Below, one piece after another: positions 21,301 through 62,261 of a stretch of 64,000 nucleotides of DNA. How positions within the stretch are numbered: the first letter of the stretch is position 1; every line of letters begins with the position of its first letter. Source of the DNA: Mytilus edulis. Its lineage: Eukaryota. Where the stretch lies: NCBI RefSeq assembly GCF_963676685.1, contig NC_092357.1, positions 14,446,001-14,510,000 on the forward strand. The letters are read 5' to 3'. Both the position numbers and the translations under genes were made by a program. The notes under the pieces are model-generated. The model ran no database searches and was not told where the DNA came from. It saw only the letters and a list, made by a program, of their open reading frames with translations.

Positions 21301-22549
21301 TTCCGCATCTTCAACATTGATACTTCTTTATCTTCTCTATTTACTTATGATTTTTTATCGGATGTATTCATTTCAGCTCTTTTTTTATCTGGTCAATACA
21401 TGAAGTTCAATTCATTGACTTTACTGAATTTCTGCCTTGTATTTAGTCCAATTTTGCTTCCACTTTGTTTCGTACTCTCGCCGATACATTTAGTCTATTT
21501 CATTTAGGTTCCAACTGATATATCTGGAGAGTAAGCTGTCAAATGAACTTTTCCTGTGAATTCAAATGAAATATCAACTTAGTCCGATAGATATATACTT
21601 TAGGCTAATAAATATCCATACATCTTTTAACATGCAGTTGTAATTAACATTTGTTCTTATGACGTTTTGGATATCATATTATACACCGTTGGGATCTTCC
21701 TCGTTCATTATTTTAATTCTTTTGATTAAGTTTTTGGCCTTTTCAGTTATCACCTCTACGTGTACTAGGTTTTGGATTTTCACAAAGGCATTATCCAAAT
21801 GCTGCAGAAAAATTGGTTCTGTTTACGTTCTTGCAAAGGTATAATCGCTATCCTTCTCATAGTTTTGTGTTTGCCATTACTCCTTTGTGTTATGATTATT
21901 TATATTTTAACTAGAAGAGTTCTCCGACAATCCAATGTCTTTTCATTACCAGAATTTTAAAGTTATCTCATTATAATACTTGATTCATTTATTTGATTCG
22001 AAAAAAATGAGCCTGGATTAAATCTTAAGTATTAAGTAACACTTGGTTTATTGTGTATATGAATTGCAATTTTACTATTTGTAAACTTGCAAGAGTGATG
22101 ATTTAAAAAAAAATCTGCTTCACTCTTTTTGATTTTCGATTTCATATGTTTGAACCAATACTTGTATACAAAGTTTACAAAACTATGAATTGTTCAAAAT
22201 AGTCAGGATTTCTGAAATCAGGAATCGATAGCCTCAGTTGGCAAAACTTTTAGAAATCTTGGATCATCAATGATCTTCAACTTTTGACTTTATTTGACTT
22301 TTTACATGTTTTGATTTTAGTGACAACAATGAGTGTTTTAAGACGAAACATGAAGCTGACGTGCTGAATTTATAAGCTTGGTATCTGATGAGTTTTCCAA
22401 ATTATTCAATCTAAGCTGTTACTAGAAACAACTCTTAAAAAGTACTGCAGTTTCCTCATTTCACGTATATGTATTATACAATAGTGATTGGAAGTACTTA
22501 ACTGATGGCTGAACAGTAGTTATTTCTTAGTCTCCGATTTGTTTGAATA

Positions 22550-22770
22550 AGAGAGGCAAAAGTTACCAGAGGGACATTTAAATTCATAAGTCGAAAATAA
22601 ACTGACAACGTCATGGCTAAAAAGTTCAACATTCACACAATAGTACTCGAAATAAACATAGAAAACTAAAAACTTAGCAACACGAACGCCACCAAAACTT
22701 GAGGGCTGTCTGGTGACCCAGAAAGGTAAGCGTGCTCCACATGTGGCACCCGTCGTGTTGCTCATTTGAA
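22550..22770 (+). repeat. Dispersed repeat family (gagaggcaaaag...ggtaag...ctccacatgtggcacccgtcgtg)
   Basis: Related pieces at about 20270-20400(+), 33260-33320(+) and 34330-34530(-). Confidence 0.65.
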
Positions 22771-25319
22771 CATTTTTAAGAAGACGATGTGACCATGTAC
22801 AATCGAGGTTAAAACAGAATGGTCAAAGAACATGCATAATAAATTATACAGAAACGTACGAATTTAATAACAAGAACCTCATTAAAGTCAGACAGTGAAC
22901 TCGAGTACATCATTCCTAATTACTAACTCACGTCGGTCTATTCATGTTGAATATCGATGATTAGTGGGTTAAACATAATAAAACGAGTTGTATGTGCATA
23001 GTTTATTCAACAAATTTTACTAAATTACAATGCTACAGGTTATGAAAATTATGAAAATTTACTTTTTATATTTTGTGAAAAAGCTGAAAATTATCCACTA
23101 AACATAGAAAAACATTATATACACATCAAGTACAAGTATTCAGTTTAACCAATAATACTTAGTCTTTTGGTTTTGGGGGACAGGTGGGTTGGTCATAAGA
23201 ATATTGATATTAACGCAAATCATAGTTTCCCATTGAAGTGGTGTCCAAATCTTTCTTAGAAAAGAAAAGTAAATATCTGGTATCTTTTATAGTCATTTAA
23301 ATTTTTAAATTTTTAAATGAAATTCCCTTGAACATTATTTGAAGTGTTCAATTTTGTCACAATGCTGTTTGATATATCATATTCACTTATTTCCATTACA
23401 CGAATTCCCCATATCCCCAAAATTGAATACAGGTAATTATAACAACGCCAGATAGGGAAGAAGTGTGATGATAAAACAGTAATGCTATCACAGTTTGACA
23501 ATGTCATATGAACACAAATAAAAAATGTCAGCCTTGATTTTTGGAATGTCTGTACATTAATGGGACTTACATGTGATATGGAATGCTTTTATAATTGTAC
23601 ATAACCCGTGAAATTACAATATAGTCAATGCTCTATGTAAGAAAATATCCCTTAAGACAAAAGAGATTTTCAAAACAAGATTTCATATTATCGTGTTGTA
23701 CGAGTATCATATAATGAAAACATGTCACATCTGCGCTTATCTAATCATGTATATGAAAATAAGATTATGTAGCTTGATTGGTAATTGTCATAGACAAAGG
23801 TAAAAAGAAATATTATAAATTCAGGCCGTCTAACAACATGCTACAAATGTACTGACTCACTCTACCTTAACTTTGACTTATAATGATAGCGGATCGGATC
23901 AGTTAGTAAATGCTGTTCATTTAATTCAAAAGTAATTAGTAAATCTCAAAATAAATGCTTTTAACAATAACGCTTGGATGAAGCTACTTTTAATGTACTT
24001 ATTTCTCAAAACTATATTAGATTTATTAAAATTTCATACTTCCAAATAGATACGTTGACCTGATTGTGGTGTTGTCTCTGGATGATTTGTTATTATAAAG
24101 AAAATAGCTAATAAAACAAGACATATTCATTATCTTAAATGTAAAAACTAATTTGTAATAATACGAACAGCTGCAGACACACAATGAGTACGTTTTAGTA
24201 CTCAAAAGGTACAATTAGATTTTAATAACCATCTCGGAACCTTTCAATAACGATCGCGGAACCTCACTCTGTGTTATAAAAGTTAAATTGTTAATATAAA
24301 CAAATTGAGAGCACAAAAGAAGCATAAATGACATTTTCGAGCCCCCTCCCCACAAACATTGATAGAAAAAATATAAAAAGGGAATCTTTATATATAAAGC
24401 GCATGTCCAAGCTATAAACATTATTATTGACAAATCACACAAATTTGTGAAATGTATTGTCTATTATATCCATACCTATTTGGTATCACCCCCTCCCCTA
24501 AACAGTAATAACGATAAGTTCTGATGATTTCTTTTGCATCAATGTAAGTTTATAGATCATGGTTTAACTCTGTCTTTAATACTTAACGATTTCTTTTTCG
24601 TCATGTTATTATTCAAAATCAAAATCATGAACTAGTTATTCTTTTAACACTTTACTCCCTAATGTCTTAAATCTTATGTCATTAACAAACACAACACAAG
24701 AGATTTTGATTCAAGTCACAATTATTGCACATTTTAAATAGATTCATGTTGAAGGAGATAATTCAATTAAAGGCATAAATGTTCGAATGATAACTTGATT
24801 TGGTCCATTACATTTGTTTTTGATGATTTGAGAGCAATAATTGTTGAATAATTTAATGGCGTAAAACTTTAAATGTAATTTAAACACTATGCAATGGTTT
24901 TGTATTATATCACGGTTGTGCCTGAATCTTGTTATAAATACAGCAAATGAAATCGTATTAATGACGATATCTTAATTTTTGAATCCCATGCAACTAAAGA
25001 AAATAGAAATCGCTCCGAGCTTTTTGGATTTTGTCAGGACTAAATTGGTGATGTTTTAGCTTGCATGCTAAATTTTTAAATCCAATTAATAGAGGGACGT
25101 ATACGTATCGACATTAAACGATTTTCAACATGAAAATACAACCTATGAGAAGCAAATTGGTATATTGCTGGTCGAGGCCGTAATCGGAGGGTCAATTAAG
25201 TATCAAAGACTTTACAAATGCTGGTTCTTTCATATATAACGTGGTCCGCTATTGTTTCCTCAAAACATTATGTCATATTCAGTAGATCAGCATTTATAAT
25301 AAAATGTCCATTTGCTATC

Positions 25320-25500
25320 TACTGTGGTTTCGTTATCATTAGTTGGATACCAATTTTCGTAGGTTTCAAATGTTCAACGAATTATAAGATTTCTCTAGGT
25401 TTTGTATGCAAAGATTTGTAAAACAACGAAATCAAGTATCCACGAAAATGCAAGTTTTCCTCAATCCACGAAAATTGGTACACACGAAAAAAAACGAGAG
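25320..25500. mobile_element. Partial mariner-like MITE
   Basis: Starts tactgtggtttcg...ttggataccaattttcgt; the mirror atccacgaaaattggtac lies near 25464-25482. Confidence 0.55.
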
Positions 25501-27945
25501 ATGAATGCAAGATTAATGTTAATGCTAATAGAAAAAGTTTTAATGATAAACTAGAACATTTGCATAATACATAAATAAGTAATAAATAAACTGTTTTCAC
25601 TGGTTTTATACTATGACCTGGTGATAACCAATAAAGAACCAAAAAAAAAGGAATGATCACAGTTTAGTGCTTACTACAATGAGATATCTGATTTGTATAA
25701 AAATCATGATTTGTACAATATTTACATAACATTAATGCTAAATACAAGTTTAAAATATATTCACAAGTATAGACTAGACATACATCCTATGATAAGATGG
25801 AAAACAGTATGTTATATTTAAAAGCAATTCATTGTTGAACACATTTCAGACACTTTTTAATTCCTATGTAAATGTTAGTACCCATAAATAATTAACAACA
25901 ACCCATCATGGTATTTTTTGAATCCCAAATTGATACAGGAGATCTTAAACAACTACTACGTTAAATAACGTGTTTAATAATATTACCCAGAATGCATCAG
26001 ATTCTGAAATTGAAAATACTTGTCGCTAGATCGTTTTCAGAGAACACCATTAATGTCATGCTTTACAATGGCAAATACTATTGCTGAGTTAGTTACTAGT
26101 TAACACAGGCATACTAAAGCATACATAAAAAAAAAATATGTTCATTAATTCTTTAAAAGGTTCGACTAAACTTATGTGTTACAATGTCAAAGTACAGTTT
26201 ATTTTAAACATGTTAGAATTAGTCTAATTTCAAATCACTTGTACAAGCTAGATTCGGTGAAACAATAAACAAATAACAAAATAGACAGTTTGCTAGTTCA
26301 AATTAAGCTATGTCTTAATAGAAAGACACACACTAATTTAATTAAAAAAATTAAATTTGAAGGAACAAAACCCGGCTATGTTATTTTCATTAATTTTTTT
26401 CCAAAACCATACATTTGCCCCAAAGTAAAATCTGATTAATCTTTATTAGAAGTATGAAGCGTCCTGGAATTCATTTTTATTTTGAATAATAAAAAACTGG
26501 TCAAAACCTCAAAAAACTTTTTCTCTTTTTTGAAATCATAGTACTATATCAGACCTTTTTTTCATATCATAAATTTGGATCAAAGAAATACAATTTTGTT
26601 TTTTTAACATTTTTATTTGCAATTGGAAGGTCAGAAATAATGTAGTTAATTGAAAATATCAATGAATAAATATATAGGCTACAGTAGTATACCGTTGTTC
26701 AGTAGTCATAATTCGATAATATATTATTTTACACAGGTTATCTGAAATTTAAAAGGTTGAATTTTGTAAAAAGATACTTAAAGGTATATATCTTTATGTT
26801 ATTTAATCTATACCGATTCCTTTAAAATCAAATGGTTTGATGGATATTTACAAATATGACTCAATGCTATAGCATGCTATATCGTGGCGTTTGCCTCATG
26901 ATGAATTATGCTTTATTGTGGCGACTGGTGATAACTAATTTGACAATCATATCATTATTTGGCAAACATATTACGTTTTTGGCAGATAATTAGAAATTCC
27001 AAATGTAAATATAATGAGTTATGAAAGTTATCTTTTCATTTTGAACAAGAAAGATTCATTATGAGGTTAACAAGATGAAATATAACAACTGTTTGCTGCA
27101 ACATGTCGTTATTTTAGAAAAATCATAAACTTAATCAATGCAAAAAGTAAAAGAATACTAGTTTTTAAGCTCAAATTGCAGTTGGGAAAGTGAATATATA
27201 CTACTGTGTATATGTATTGAAAAAAATATATAAATAGATTTTTTTTCCGAATATTTTGAGGTTATAAAAAAAGTACATCTTTCAGGTTTTATACTATGAT
27301 ATTCTATGTAAAAAGGCGTCAGAATGATGCTAATGATTTTGAAGGTTAGCACTATTACATTATTTGCTATTTCCGCCCATCATGTTCATAAATGAATGAT
27401 AAAAAGATGAGAATACATTAAATTTGAACAAGATATCGTAGTAATAAATGGTATATCTTTAGACTGTATATGTACTATGTTAAATTGTGCCATCTACAAA
27501 TAGGTACTTATTCAGAAGAAATTATAAAGTTCCATTTTGCATTGAATTTAATGCCAAAACCCCTTAAATTCTCTAGTCTGGTTTTGTTCGATGCACATTG
27601 TGAAGTTAAGATATGAATTTTTATGTCTGGGTTTTGATTTGAATATGTTTTTGTGATGAATATGTCAAAATAATATGCGTTATATAAAAACATTTTATGA
27701 TTTTGAATTTTGCATATGAATTGCTCCATTGCAATAATCATTGTTTTATATATAAATATGTATAGTTCTAACAAAATTTGACTTTGCTACATAGTTGTCA
27801 GAAAACAAGGCACATTGAATGGAAAAAATACAATGATATGCCATATCTGATTATGAGGTTTACATTCACATAACGATTACATTTTTTTAAGCGATCGTAA
27901 AAGAGTTTCTTTTATCTATTAATGATTGAATGATTAGTTTGACAC

Positions 27946-28023
27946 ATAGTAACTCACAGTAGAAACATGTTATAGTTACTCACAGTAGAAATATGTTATA
28001 GTTACTCACAGTAGAAACATGTT
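27946..28023. repeat. 26-bp tandem repeat, 3 copies, in the putative 3'UTR
   Basis: atagttactcacagtagaaacatgtt x3. Confidence 0.9.
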
Positions 28024-28830
28024 TTCTTGTTCATTATTGTTTTATCAACCTTTTTTTATTTTCCTTATTTTAAAGCAGCGCTTCTAAGTAAATTGTGTTT
28101 AATATTATTCATTTGGTGCTCAAAATTATCATGAATTGGAATTTTTGAGATGGTATTTTTTTTTTTAAATTTAAGTTTATTAGAGAAAATATAAAAATGT
28201 ACTTTCAACGGTACAAATTAAACCACGATCTATCATTTCCATCCAATTTTACATTCTTCAAATACATAATACAAACATATATAATTCTAAAAACTACCAA
28301 TAATCTATCCGATGGTTACTATTTACATTTTACAATTGAAATGTACATTTACTTAACATAATAAAATATGAAAACACAACTGCAAAATAAGTATTTGCAT
28401 AATATGCAATTTCCATCATCAATTCCATAATTATCTAACAACAAACAGCTGTCACGTGACTTGTCTCTTGAAATACAGTAGCACCGTTGGTTGGAAATAA
28501 CGAAACAATTTCCAGAAATGTGTATACATCACCTTCCACATTCTTTGAGGGTCTGAAAAGGTTTTTTTTTTATCTTATCGTTAATTTTTCTGCAAAATTT
28601 TATTTGCTTGATCTATTTTTTCAATTATTTTCTGTTCTTTATATTCAAGTATTTTTTTGTTCTGTATTCTCTAATCCCCTTCCAGACCCTCTGATATTAC
28701 TGTCATTCTTCGCTTAATTGGACGGTGATTCTTATTATTATGAAACATGCATTTATGTAATGATTAAGAGAAATGCAATGTTCAAAACACTGTTCTTCAG
28801 AGACTCGGAGTCTGTGTCTGCGCTAATTGT

Positions 28831-28992
28831 TTAAACCTCGGTTTCGAAAGATGATTGGCTGATATCACCATTCGGAAGGTTGAGATCATCTGATAGTAAA
28901 ATATCGGAAACTCTCTGACCTTGTGTACCTTCTCCATCATCAAATGCATAATACTGGATTTTAACAAGTTTCAGTAGTTTTTGTGCGGTTAG
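28831..28992 (-). CDS. inx: Putative C-terminal readthrough extension of innexin (53 aa, ends ETEV)
   Basis: After TGA (28995-28993) the frame continues CTA ACC GCA...GAA ACC GAG GTT TAA = LTAQKLLKLVKIQYYAFDDGEGTQGQRVSDILLSDDLNLPNGDISQSSFETEV*. TGA-CTA context; about 38% GC by hand count. Confidence 0.6.
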   Translation of the reverse strand, partial: LTAQKLLKLVKIQYYAFDDGEGTQGQRVSDILLSDDLNLPNGDISQSSFETEV

Positions 28993-30196
28993 TCAGACAT
29001 TACTATTGTCATCGCTGACCTGATTAGCATGTTTAAATAATGGTTTGTTTCTATAATGGTTCCATAGGTGTAAAACTATTTCTGACACTAAAACATCATT
29101 AGCGTTTTTACCTACAAGTCTCAAAACAAAAATGCCATCTTGTCGCAAATACTGCTCAGCGAATTTGACGGCCATTTTCTTGTCTAATTCTGATTTGTAA
29201 CATTCATTAATCCTGAGAAATTTTTTCAAATAACGAATTCGGTGTTGTCTAAATATCATAGTATAACACCATACTAAGAAATTCGCCGAACTTAAAATAG
29301 ACACAAATACAAGCCAAAACCAGATAAATATAAAAATCTTCTCATTAAAAAGATTTATTGGTAGTACACATTGTACAGTGTACTGTTGGAGTGTAGCGAG
29401 TTTACGAATTTTAAAATCACATAGTGTCACCCTTGGGAACCTTGCTGATTCGTCCCATTCTTCACCACTGGCCAGATGGCTTAATACTTCAAGTCCATAT
29501 GCGTTGTAATTTGTCCCTAGAAATTCATTTAAAATGAATAACTGTCCAATAGCATTCGACATGTATAGTAATTTAATAAACATATATATGGTGACAAGAT
29601 AATTTCCATAACGTTTTCCACATACTATACAACAGTATTTTGAAATAGTTTGACGCAAGCGTATAAAACATCCGGATCTATATTCACGTGCATTTTCCAA
29701 CCATCTGTCCATGTAACGTACTATGTGTTTTATAGTTCGTTCCCTATCATCTGGAGAAATATACTGTGTTTCCGCTGCAAGTGTGACTATTTTATCCAAA
29801 TTGACACCAGCCGACGCTGTTAAAATTCTCCACATAATACATGGGACCTTAAACAACAAGGCTTGGAATAACAAGATCATCGGAACCCACTGGTAGTATG
29901 TAATCTCGCTTTCATATCTCGCGTGATTGTACTTCGGAATATCTTTGTCAATATGGACGTAGTATGTATTGGATATCCAACATACATTGTTAGTGTAGTC
30001 AACCATAGACTCCTTGAATTCAGCCGGACACCAGCAGTGGATTGGCTCGCCCACATACTGCTTCGTACTAACAACAATGGTAAAAATGATGAAAATTATA
30101 GTCGTGTATAAATGATTTAACCTATCGATCCAGTCGTCATCGTAACGACCTTTTAACCTTGCATATGTGGCGAAGCTTCCGAGGACACTGTCAAGC
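28993..30196 (-). CDS. inx: Innexin (invertebrate gap-junction/pannexin family), main coding exon
   Basis: The ORF track protein (28993..30054) extends upstream in frame by 47 codons (LDSVLGSFATYARLKGRYDDDWIDRLNHLYTTIIFIIFTIVVSTKQY) to a pyrimidine-rich acceptor ttttatctttttAG|G at 30198-30197. Innexin signatures: DDWIDRL, QYVGEPIHCWCP, NVCW, YYQWVP, FPRVTLCDF, QCVLPINLFNEKIFIFIWFW; four hydrophobic segments; two Cys pairs in the extracellular loops. Confidence 0.96.
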
Positions 30197-53754: not shown

Positions 53755-53759
53755 ATCAT
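53755..53759 (-). CDS. inx: Innexin alternative first exon 1b, coding part (ATG AT); 5'UTR probably extends to ~54150
   Basis: Minus strand reads gacgaa ATG AT|GTAAGT, a perfect donor in phase 2. Joining to the G at 30196 gives ATG ATG CTT GAC = MMLDSVLG, a typical short innexin N-terminus. Intron 30197..53754 (23,558 bp); product 402 aa. Confidence 0.62.
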
Positions 53760-54148
53760 TTCGTCTTTAGGAATAGGTTTATACGCAAATTTCTTTCGAA
53801 AAAGAAAACATATCATTTCTAATTCAAATCCCTAGATGCAAATAAATCTCCACCGCCAATATCCTGCAACTCATTCTTAACTTCTATAATTATTCCTATA
53901 ACAATCCTGCTGCCTTTACTGAACAAAATCTGCCATACTTTATTCCGAAGGTATGTTCTTCCGAAGGTATGTTCCGAAGGTAGCAATCGATGCTTCTACC
54001 TTGTTCACCTATTATAAACTGGAATATATTTACATTCACCGGTTCCATTGCTATCGTTGGACATCAATAATTTAAACAGAGGATCGGAGAACGTGTAAGT
54101 AAATAGTAAAGGGTTATTATTGTATGCAGACCTGATGAATAGCGTTAG

Positions 54149-62076: not shown

Positions 62077-62261
62077 CCGTCCGGTAAAAAGTAATCCATT
62101 AAAGGGGCTTGCAAATCGCCCATTGGTATTTCATGACCGGAAGGGTGGGAAGGATCTGACCCGCCACCACCTCCCGCTCCATCCTGGTGGCGACGCTCGT
62201 TGTGACGGTGATGGTGGTGGTGTCGACCCCCACCCCCTCCGCCTCCTTTTTTCCCAGGCAT
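62077..62261 (-). CDS. inx: Innexin alternative first exon 1a encoding a Gly/His-rich N-terminal extension
   Basis: GC-rich island. ATG at 62261 follows an in-frame TAA (62270-62268). Reads MPGKKGGGGGGGRHHHHHRHNERRHQDGAGGGGGSDPSHPSGHEIPMGDLQAPLMDYFLPD then GG|GTAAGA (donor at 62076, phase 2). GG+G(30196) = Gly, in frame with LDSVLG. Intron 31,880 bp; product 462 aa. Confidence 0.68.

What the first reader, a model, noticed from the sequence alone, without database searches (positions are those of the whole stretch)
28831..28995. Stop-codon readthrough candidate in an innexin: TGA-CTA followed by a 53-aa extension ending in a PDZ ligand (ETEV)
Seen: the innexin ends ...DDNSNV TGA CTA ACC..., and the frame stays open for 53 codons (LTAQKLLKLVKIQYYAFDDGEGTQGQRVSDILLSDDLNLPNGDISQSSFETEV) to TAA at 28833-28831. 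Established: UGA followed by CUA is the best-known leaky context in animals (UGA-CUA(G) in AQP4, LDHB, MDH1, OPRK1), and E-T-x-V-COOH is a textbook class I PDZ-binding motif of the type bound by MAGUK scaffolds. A rough estimate for a 53-codon open frame by chance in about 32% GC DNA is 1-2%, before counting the context and the terminal motif. Inference: programmed readthrough produces a minority long subunit (+54 aa) that could anchor or cluster the whole gap-junction channel. I am not aware of this being described for mollusc innexins, but I cannot search.
Basis: partly seen in the sequence, partly recalled or inferred. Interest (0 to 1): 0.92.

Follow-up and report, generated by a model that had tools for sequence, protein, structure and literature searches.

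The report
Conserved stop-codon readthrough tail on innexin
A mussel gap-junction (innexin) gene has a leaky-looking TGA stop followed by about 50 more codons that oysters and clams also keep open and protein-like, always ending in ETEV, so a longer channel subunit is probably made by ribosomes reading through the stop.

Summary
The unc-9-like innexin of this Mytilus genome ends ...DDNSNV TGA CTA ACC. The frame then stays open for 53 codons, ends FETEV and stops at TAA 28833-28831.

Two oysters (C. gigas, C. virginica) and two venerid-like clams have the same stop followed by a 48-49 codon open frame. It begins LT..K.....K.Q and ends [FS]ETEV.

- The similarity is frame-specific: z 6.6-11.4 in frame 0, about 0 after the second stop.
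- 10 of 17 residues shared by mussel and clam use different codons.
- Base composition switches to UTR-like at the second stop, not the first.
- CTA ACC G after the stop is invariant at the DNA level.
- UGA-CUAA is a validated high-readthrough context in human cells.
- Spliced RNA contigs keep the stop and show no joint. No SECIS, no downstream RNA structure and no repeat were found.
- 28 paralogues in the same genome have post-stop frames of 0-44 codons.

Translation itself (Ribo-seq, peptides, reporter) and PDZ binding are untested.

Verdict: a well-supported new member of a known kind (UGA-CUA programmed readthrough). I found no paper describing it for innexins or molluscs.

The parts
28996..30196 (-). 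Terminal coding exon of an unc-9-like innexin (400 codons 30195..28996; base 30196 completes a split ATG). Canonical product ends ...NQVSDDNSNV.
   Evidence: Pfam PF00876 E=4e-104. Differs at 1 of the 400 exon residues from M. trossulus XP_063410968.1 / P0143. RNA contig of run X3 is spliced exactly at 30196 and X1's contig ends there.
28993..28995 (-). First stop codon TGA, the proposed leaky stop.
   Evidence: No other letter is read here in four runs. TGA at the same position in L005:2526-2528. 'W' gene calls at this position in oysters and a second clam.
28986..28992 (-). Stop context CTA ACC G (UGA-CUAA...), identical base for base in mussel and clam.
   Evidence: the seven bases are invariant while synonymous sites just upstream differ (AAT GTC versus AAC GTT). 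CUAA/CUAG context: PMC4132726 and bioRxiv 10.64898/2026.07.14.738498.
28834..28992 (-). Readthrough extension, 53 codons. Conserved start LTAQKLLKLVKIQ (28954-28992), variable acidic middle, shared N-G (P-N-G in mussel and clams), end FETEV.
   Evidence: frame-specific similarity to the oyster and clam tails, synonymous turnover at conserved residues, CDS-like GC with codon periodicity, 0 stops in frame 0 against 2 and 5 in the other frames.
28834..28848 (-). Terminal FETEV; ETEV fits the class I PDZ-ligand pattern x-[S/T]-x-V-COOH.
   Evidence: E-T-E-V invariant in all five taxa. Its codons differ synonymously between mussel and clam (ACC/ACG, GAG/GAA, GTT/GTG).
28831..28833 (-). Second stop TAA (TAG in the clam L005).
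   Evidence: Composition and peptide similarity fall to background beyond it.
27000..28830 (-). Long AT-rich 3'UTR (at least this far), polymorphic.
   Evidence: X1 contigs tile 27000-30196 and stop at the exon boundary; 17 substitutions and 6 indels were seen here. GC 0.27. No Rfam match.
28954..29019 (-). Rejected rival: a possible 66-nt in-frame intron (GT 29019-29018, branch-like TGACTAAC, AG 28955-28954) that would remove the stop.
   Evidence: Seen. No joint in four runs. The donor GT is absent in oysters (Met codon, ATG) and in the clam (ATC).
53755..53816 (-). Upstream first coding exon (MICFLF...KDEM plus AT of the split codon) of the isoform seen in RNA.
   Evidence: peptide of P0143 found here. 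Loose end of the X3 contig at 30196.
62077..62261 (-). Alternative first exon with a Gly/His-rich N-terminus.
   Evidence: Resembles the long N-termini of the oyster isoforms X1 (P0145, P0146, P0148).

Best explanation
Programmed translational readthrough. Most ribosomes terminate at UGA and make the canonical innexin ending ...SDDNSNV. A fraction decode UGA with a near-cognate tRNA, helped by the conserved UGA-CUA-A context, and add about 50 residues. The added tail has a short basic, hydrophobic, probably helical segment, then a fast-evolving acidic linker that is probably disordered, then an invariant ETEV carboxy-terminus. Shown here: the anatomy, the cross-species protein-level constraint, the conserved context, and that the dominant mRNA keeps the stop. 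Inferred: that ribosomes actually read through, at what rate, and that the new end (E-T-E-V, class I PDZ type) replaces or re-positions the canonical S-N-V end so that channels containing a long subunit bind a different or additional scaffold.
For: (1) Open frames of 53, 48, 48, 49 and 49 codons follow the same stop in Mytilus, C. gigas, C. virginica and two venerid-like clams. The chance per species is about 3-4%. 28 paralogues reach at most 44 codons.
(2) Frame-0 peptide similarity has z = 9.6, 11.4 and 6.6, with 0 of 2000 shuffles as good. The other frames give z = 2.8 and 1.6 and hold 2-5 stops each. After the second stop z is about 0.
(3) 17 of 49 aligned residues are identical between mussel and clam, and 10 of these use different codons, including Ser TCA/AGT. 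dS is saturated. blastn similarity ends about 18 nt past the stop and nothing else in about 3 kb of 3'UTR aligns.
(4) Extension GC is 0.38 and 0.46, against CDS 0.36 and 0.41 and UTR 0.27 and 0.33. No UTR window reaches the extension's GC. GC1 is about 0.59 and GC2 about 0.30 in both species.
(5) CTA ACC G is invariant. UGA-CUA alone gives 1.5% readthrough and UGA-CUAG 7-31% (PMC4132726). CUAA was the only one of 765 variants that did not lower readthrough.
(6) The two oysters have identical tails (48 of 48), against 4 differences in 337 core residues.
(7) Spliced RNA contigs run through the stop with no joint and no other letter.
(8) There is no in-frame Met in the Mytilus tail, so it is not an independent downstream ORF.
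Against: There is no direct evidence of translation beyond the stop: no Ribo-seq, no peptide, no reporter. DNA is in hand for only two lineages, and the oyster and second-clam data are proteins from gene callers. Only bivalves were sampled, and nothing is known for gastropods, cephalopods or chitons, whose annotated proteins all end at DDNSNV. Contigs drop rare variants, so minor splice forms or low-level editing cannot be excluded. The tail evolves fast (dN about 0.63 mussel-clam; 9 of 49 residues differ between two clams whose cores differ at 1 of 287). No stimulatory RNA structure was found. The structure model of the tail has low confidence (pLDDT below 50).
Confidence: 0.78

Rival explanations
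1. The tail is reached by alternative splicing that removes the stop: in Mytilus a 66-nt in-frame intron (29019..28954), or another donor/acceptor pair elsewhere.
For: Mytilus has CAG|GTCAGC upstream of the stop, a branch-like TGACTAAC, and ...TCCAG|TAT 66 nt on, all in frame.
Against: There is no joint in four runs, two of which are demonstrably spliced RNA. The donor GT is missing in oysters (ATG) and in the clam (ATC). The 13 codons that would be intronic are conserved at the protein level with conservative replacements. None of the NCBI isoforms examined, from about 30 mollusc species, has another C-terminus.
Confidence: 0.06
2. The tail is not translated. The open frames and the conserved ends reflect a conserved 3'UTR element plus chance.
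For: An open frame of this length arises 3-4% of the time. The base-for-base conservation right after the stop could be a regulatory RNA site. A paralogue (L014) shows a chance-like TGA-CTAG with an STV tail that is not conserved.
Against: Conservation is frame-specific and visible at the protein level but not the nucleotide level. Composition and codon periodicity are coding-like up to the second stop in two species. Three deep lineages are independently open and all end ETEV-stop.
Confidence: 0.09
3. A-to-I RNA editing converts UGA to UGG (Trp) in part of the transcripts.
For: It would give the same product. Editing occurs in molluscs (own knowledge).
Against: No T>C at 28993 in four runs (contigs can miss minor variants). 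No stable structure around the stop (z -0.5 to +0.9). ADARs disfavour an A preceded by G (established knowledge). The conserved CUA context is explained by readthrough, not by editing.
Confidence: 0.04
4. UGA is decoded as selenocysteine.
For: The stop is UGA in every taxon seen.
Against: No SECIS or any Rfam match at E<=1 in window 22000-29300 or on the whole of L005. No orthologue has Cys at this position. A lone Sec in a disordered tail has no precedent that I know of.
Confidence: 0.01

Closest known systems
Vertebrate UGA-CUAG readthrough genes (AQP4, OPRK1, OPRL1, MAPK10, MDH1, LDHB, VDR)
   Same: UGA followed by CUA, with the context conserved base for base. The extension is conserved as protein across a deep clade. 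No downstream RNA structure is needed, and the short form is expected to remain dominant (PMC4132726, PMC12233894).
   Different: The seventh base is A, not G (CUAA is tolerated or better in MAPK10). The host clade is bivalve molluscs and the gene family is innexin. Efficiency is unmeasured.
AQP4ex, the readthrough isoform of aquaporin-4
   Same: An oligomeric membrane channel whose canonical end is a class I type S-x-V (SSV) that binds a PDZ domain only weakly. A minority readthrough subunit co-assembles and is required for anchoring (PMC6444679).
   Different: The innexin tail itself ends in a second, conserved PDZ-type motif (ETEV). No localisation or binding data exist here.
Connexin-36 SAYV binding to ZO-1 PDZ1 at vertebrate electrical synapses
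   Same: The C-terminus of a gap-junction subunit acts as a PDZ ligand that ties the channel to a MAGUK scaffold (PMC7179694, PMC8081524).
   Different: Connexins are unrelated to innexins. The ligand is constitutive, not produced by recoding. No innexin-PDZ pair is described in the papers I read.
Insect programmed readthrough (hundreds to about 1,400 Drosophila and Anopheles genes)
   Same: Detected by protein-coding conservation past the stop. UGA-C is enriched and the extensions are disordered and fast-evolving (PMC5100048, PMC13278127).
   Different: No innexin name occurs in the supplementary text held for PMC5100048. Many insect cases rely on RNA structures, and none is seen here.

Membership tests
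Programmed stop-codon readthrough, UGA-CUA class | In-frame open reading frame after the annotated stop, kept open in diverged species | tested here: met
   53, 48, 48, 49 and 49 codons in five bivalve taxa of three orders.
Programmed stop-codon readthrough, UGA-CUA class | Protein-coding evolutionary signature confined to the interval between the two stops | tested here: met
   Frame-0 z 6.6-11.4 against about 0 beyond the second stop. 10 of 17 identical residues use different codons. Whole-codon length differences. CDS-like GC periodicity. Only a few taxa; no formal PhyloCSF.
Programmed stop-codon readthrough, UGA-CUA class | UGA followed by CUA, conserved | tested here: met
   TGA CTA ACC G is identical in Mytilus and L005. 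TGA is inferred for the oysters and the second clam from W calls followed by L-T. The inference is validated on L005, whose W call (P0163) sits on a real TGA.
Programmed stop-codon readthrough, UGA-CUA class | Mature mRNA retains the stop (not removed by splicing or editing) | tested here: met
   Contigs of four runs, two of them spliced at 30196, run through the stop without a joint or another letter. Minor forms are not excluded.
Programmed stop-codon readthrough, UGA-CUA class | Ribosomes or protein product detected beyond the stop; reporter readthrough above background | not testable with these tools
   No Ribo-seq, proteome or assay was available.
Innexin (Pfam PF00876) | Match to the family profile over its full length | tested here: met
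   E=4e-104, profile positions 1-333 of 333; 83-91% identity to mollusc unc-9-like innexins.
Class I PDZ-binding motif | x-[S/T]-x-hydrophobic at the free carboxy-terminus | tested here: met
   E-T-E-V directly before the second stop in all five taxa. The canonical end S-N-V also fits. This is a sequence pattern only.
Class I PDZ-binding motif | Binding to a PDZ domain | not tested
   No complex prediction was sent. A generic PDZ dock would not have discriminated between the readings.
Selenoprotein | SECIS element in the 3'UTR | tested here: not met
   No Rfam match at E<=1 in 7.3 kb of the window or on L005.

The most novel reading that the evidence does not exclude
An ancient recoding switch, present at least since the common ancestor of pteriomorph and heterodont bivalves, lets one innexin gene make two C-termini. 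The bulk form ends -SNV and a readthrough form carries -ETEV on a flexible tether. The two recruit different PDZ scaffolds, so the readthrough rate sets how gap-junction plaques or electrical synapses are anchored. This would be the first conserved nuclear readthrough gene described in Lophotrochozoa and the first recoded gap-junction protein. It would also show that the UGA-CUA signal works across Bilateria.
Probability: 0.35. Interest if true: 0.82.

Novelty: new member of a known kind. Interest (0 to 1): 0.66.

Why it matters
Conserved programmed readthrough is documented mainly in insects and in about a dozen vertebrate genes. A case held across deeply diverged bivalves with the same UGA-CUA signal would extend both the phenomenon and its signal to molluscs. 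For gap-junction biology it gives a concrete, testable handle on how innexin channels might be tied to scaffolds. That has been worked out for connexins (Cx36-ZO-1), but I found no described case for innexins. It also shows that current annotation of every mollusc genome examined omits this product.

Tried and rejected
This is why gastropods, cephalopods, chitons, scallops, unionids and protobranchs are untested.
- A search with the tail region of P0002 found only itself.
- The one search of protein representatives was wasted. The profile kept all 389 columns of P0124 and returned generic innexins, and no hit aligned into the tail.
- Scans of genome contigs and viral contigs found no orthologue. 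The metagenome loci L006-L009 lack the C-terminus.
- Listing of further clusters gave no gastropod 'W' call.
- The 66-nt intron was rejected (see rivals). There was no SECIS and no post-stop RNA structure.
- A second candidate in paralogue L014 (TGA-CTAG, 29 codons, ends ASTV) has no support. Its orthologues end ...EGEDV, and the only other 'W' call (P0028) has an unrelated 20-residue tail. It serves as a negative control.
- Variants in four runs: none between 28675 and 29283, against 7 in the next 430 nt of UTR. This is too few to test selection.
- Papers: nothing on innexin readthrough or on mollusc nuclear readthrough. One search was too loose.
- Slips: one search used an off-by-one frame for L005 and was redone. 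Searches were format errors. (bacterial promoter scan) is irrelevant.
The window's pieces were searched apart, and only database proteins already carrying W were used whole. Complex prediction was not sent.

Full report
WHAT IS THERE. On the minus strand the window carries the large terminal exon (30196..28996) of an innexin. Pfam PF00876 matches at E=4e-104 over the whole profile. The exon differs at one residue from Mytilus trossulus innexin unc-9-like (P0141/P0143), so the genome is a Mytilus. The canonical protein ends ...NQVSDDNSNV. The stop is TGA (28995-28993), the next codons are CTA ACC, and the frame stays open for 53 codons (window:28834-28992:-), ending FETEV before TAA at 28833-28831.

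IS IT MORE THAN CHANCE WITHIN THIS GENOME? In this window an open frame of 53 codons or more follows 2.8% of stop triplets, and 3.7% of all positions. Twenty-eight other innexin-like loci of the same genome have post-stop frames of 0-44 codons with a median of about 13. The tail is single-copy in 1.37 Gb, so it is not a repeat fragment. Its GC is 0.38, against 0.36 for the CDS and 0.27 for the 3'UTR, and no UTR window of equal length reaches it. GC by codon position is 0.59/0.30/0.26. Frame 0 has no stop, while the other frames have 2 and 5.

COMPARATIVE TEST. The canonical end ...SDDNSNV is nearly invariant in bivalves, gastropods, a chiton and octopuses, and the NCBI isoforms differ only at the N-terminus. 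Some gene calls on Logan and ENA contigs read 'W' at the stop position and continue. P0124 and P0131 have a core identical to C. gigas, P0127 has a core identical to C. virginica, P0163 is a clam and P0447 is a second clam.

A 'W' there is what a caller using a TGA=Trp table produces. This was verified on the one case with DNA: metagenome contig L005, which is 97.6% identical to Mercenaria and is the locus behind P0163. It reads ...AAC GTT TGA CTA ACC, then 49 open codons ending SETEV, then TAG (L005:2526-2678). The tails are therefore 53 codons (mussel), 48 (both oysters, identical to each other) and 49 (both clams). Across the taxa L1, T2, K5, K11, Q13, one Asp, N-G and the final E-T-E-V are invariant.

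Global peptide alignment scores in frame 0 exceed all 2000 shuffles: z = 9.6 mussel-clam, 11.4 mussel-oyster and 6.6 clam-oyster. The other two frames give z = 2.8 and 1.6, and the 159 nt after the second stop give z between -1.0 and 0.5.

Between mussel and clam, 17 of 49 aligned residues are identical, and 10 of those use different codons: ETEV as GAA ACC GAG GTT against GAA ACG GAA GTG, Ser as TCA against AGT, and differing third bases in the N and G codons of P-N-G. dS is saturated and dN is about 0.63. At the nucleotide level blastn similarity ends about 18 nt past the stop, and nothing else in about 3 kb of 3' sequence aligns. L005 shows the same composition step as the mussel, at the second stop (0.46 against 0.41 CDS and 0.33 UTR; GC1 0.59, GC2 0.31).

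The two clams differ at 1 of 287 core residues but at 9 of 49 tail residues, most of them between similar residues. The tail therefore evolves fast, as readthrough extensions usually do, yet it stays open and keeps both ends. Mussels and oysters on one side and venerids on the other belong to lineages that separated in the early Palaeozoic (my own knowledge), so neutral 3'UTR would be unrecognisable between them.

HOW IS THE STOP PASSED? Splicing: Mytilus has a plausible 66-nt in-frame intron (GT at 29019, AG at 28954). However, contigs of four runs cross the stop without any joint. Two of these are demonstrably spliced RNA: X3 is joined at 30196 to the exon at 53755-53816, and X1 ends exactly at 30196 while tiling 3.2 kb downstream. 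The donor GT is also absent in oysters (Met codon) and in the clam (ATC).

Editing: no run reads another letter at the stop, no stable structure surrounds it (z -0.5 to +0.9), and ADARs disfavour an A that follows G (established knowledge). Selenocysteine: no SECIS or other Rfam match at E<=1 in window 22000-29300 or on L005. An independent downstream ORF is excluded because the Mytilus tail has no in-frame Met.

That leaves near-cognate decoding of UGA. The context fits. CTA ACC G is invariant between mussel and clam, although the synonymous sites just upstream differ. In vertebrates UGA-CUAG gives 7-31% readthrough, UGA-CUA alone gives 1.5%, and the first six bases are the universally conserved part (PMC4132726). 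In a scan of all 256 tetranucleotides, CUAA was the single variant that did not reduce readthrough (bioRxiv 10.64898/2026.07.14.738498).

WHAT WOULD THE LONG FORM DO? This part is inference. An AlphaFold2 model of the oyster read-through call P0124 places a short helix over the conserved basic and hydrophobic start, and leaves the last 35 or so residues unstructured. pLDDT is below 50 over nearly all of the tail, so this is only a hint. The invariant E-T-E-V-COOH fits the class I PDZ-ligand pattern, and so does the canonical S-N-V.

Readthrough would therefore not create a PDZ ligand from nothing. It would bury the first one and present a different one (E at -1 and -3 instead of N) about 50 residues further from the channel. 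The nearest precedent is AQP4: its SSV end binds the syntrophin PDZ weakly, and its readthrough isoform is needed for anchoring (PMC6444679). In connexin electrical synapses the Cx36 SAYV end binds ZO-1 PDZ1 (PMC7179694). No binding was tested here.

NEGATIVE CONTROL. A paralogue (L014) also ends TGA CTAG, followed by 29 open codons ending ASTV. Its orthologues end ...EGEDV, and the only other 'W' call (P0028) continues into an unrelated 20-residue tail. 'W' calls and TGA-CTA therefore do not by themselves produce conserved tails.

DNA is therefore available for only two lineages, and nothing can be said about non-bivalve molluscs. The runs laid were Logan contigs, which hide rare variants. 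No ribosome, peptide or reporter evidence exists. The profile search was mis-designed and uninformative. I built no joined or read-through protein from the window. Its pieces were searched separately, and only database proteins that already carry W were used whole.

KNOWN OR NEW. Full-text searches found no paper linking innexins with readthrough, and none on nuclear readthrough in molluscs. The supplementary text held for the Anopheles/Drosophila catalogue names no innexin. The mechanism is of a known kind, so I file this as a new member: UGA-CUA programmed readthrough in a new gene family and clade. Confidence is about 0.78 that the tail is translated by readthrough and maintained by selection, and about 0.35 that it acts as a PDZ-ligand switch.

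Noticed in passing
L014 (G000:C14:5342876-5346256), CDS L014:1462-2685:-, stop L014:1459-1461, tail L014:1372-1458:-: A paralogous innexin also ends TGA CTAG, followed by 29 open codons ending ASTV. Orthologues all end ...EGEDV, and the one other read-through call (P0028) has an unrelated tail, so there is no cross-species support.
   Followed up: yes
window 62077-62261 (-) and 53755-53816 (-): Two alternative first coding exons. One is Gly/His-rich and resembles the long N-termini of oyster isoform X1. The other encodes MICFLF...KDEM and is the one joined to 30196 in RNA run X3. The gene therefore spans at least 35 kb of the window.
   Followed up: partly
window 28996-29019 (-) and orthologues: The canonical C-terminus ...SDDNSNV is nearly invariant from bivalves to octopus and chiton, and is itself an S-x-V ending. 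One Mya arenaria paralogue-like protein (P0012) ends NSENDTIV instead.
   Followed up: partly
window 27000-28700 (-): The 3'UTR is long (over 2 kb covered by RNA contigs), is 27% GC and is highly polymorphic (17 substitutions and 6 indels among four runs). In contrast, 28675-29283 showed no variant.
   Followed up: no
G000:C14:46.39-46.66 Mb and C14:0.09-0.40 Mb (L011, L012, L015, L016, L018-L021, L023-L026): The innexin paralogues are clustered in tandem arrays on the same contig as the window. Two neighbours of the window's gene (L027, L028, at about 14.69-14.70 Mb) carry an internal TGA in the match and may be pseudogenes.
   Followed up: no
L017 (G000:C14:22935376-22938765): Another paralogue keeps a DDNSN motif internally and ends ...ENADSV, again an S-x-V type end. 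PDZ-type endings may be common among mollusc innexins.
   Followed up: no
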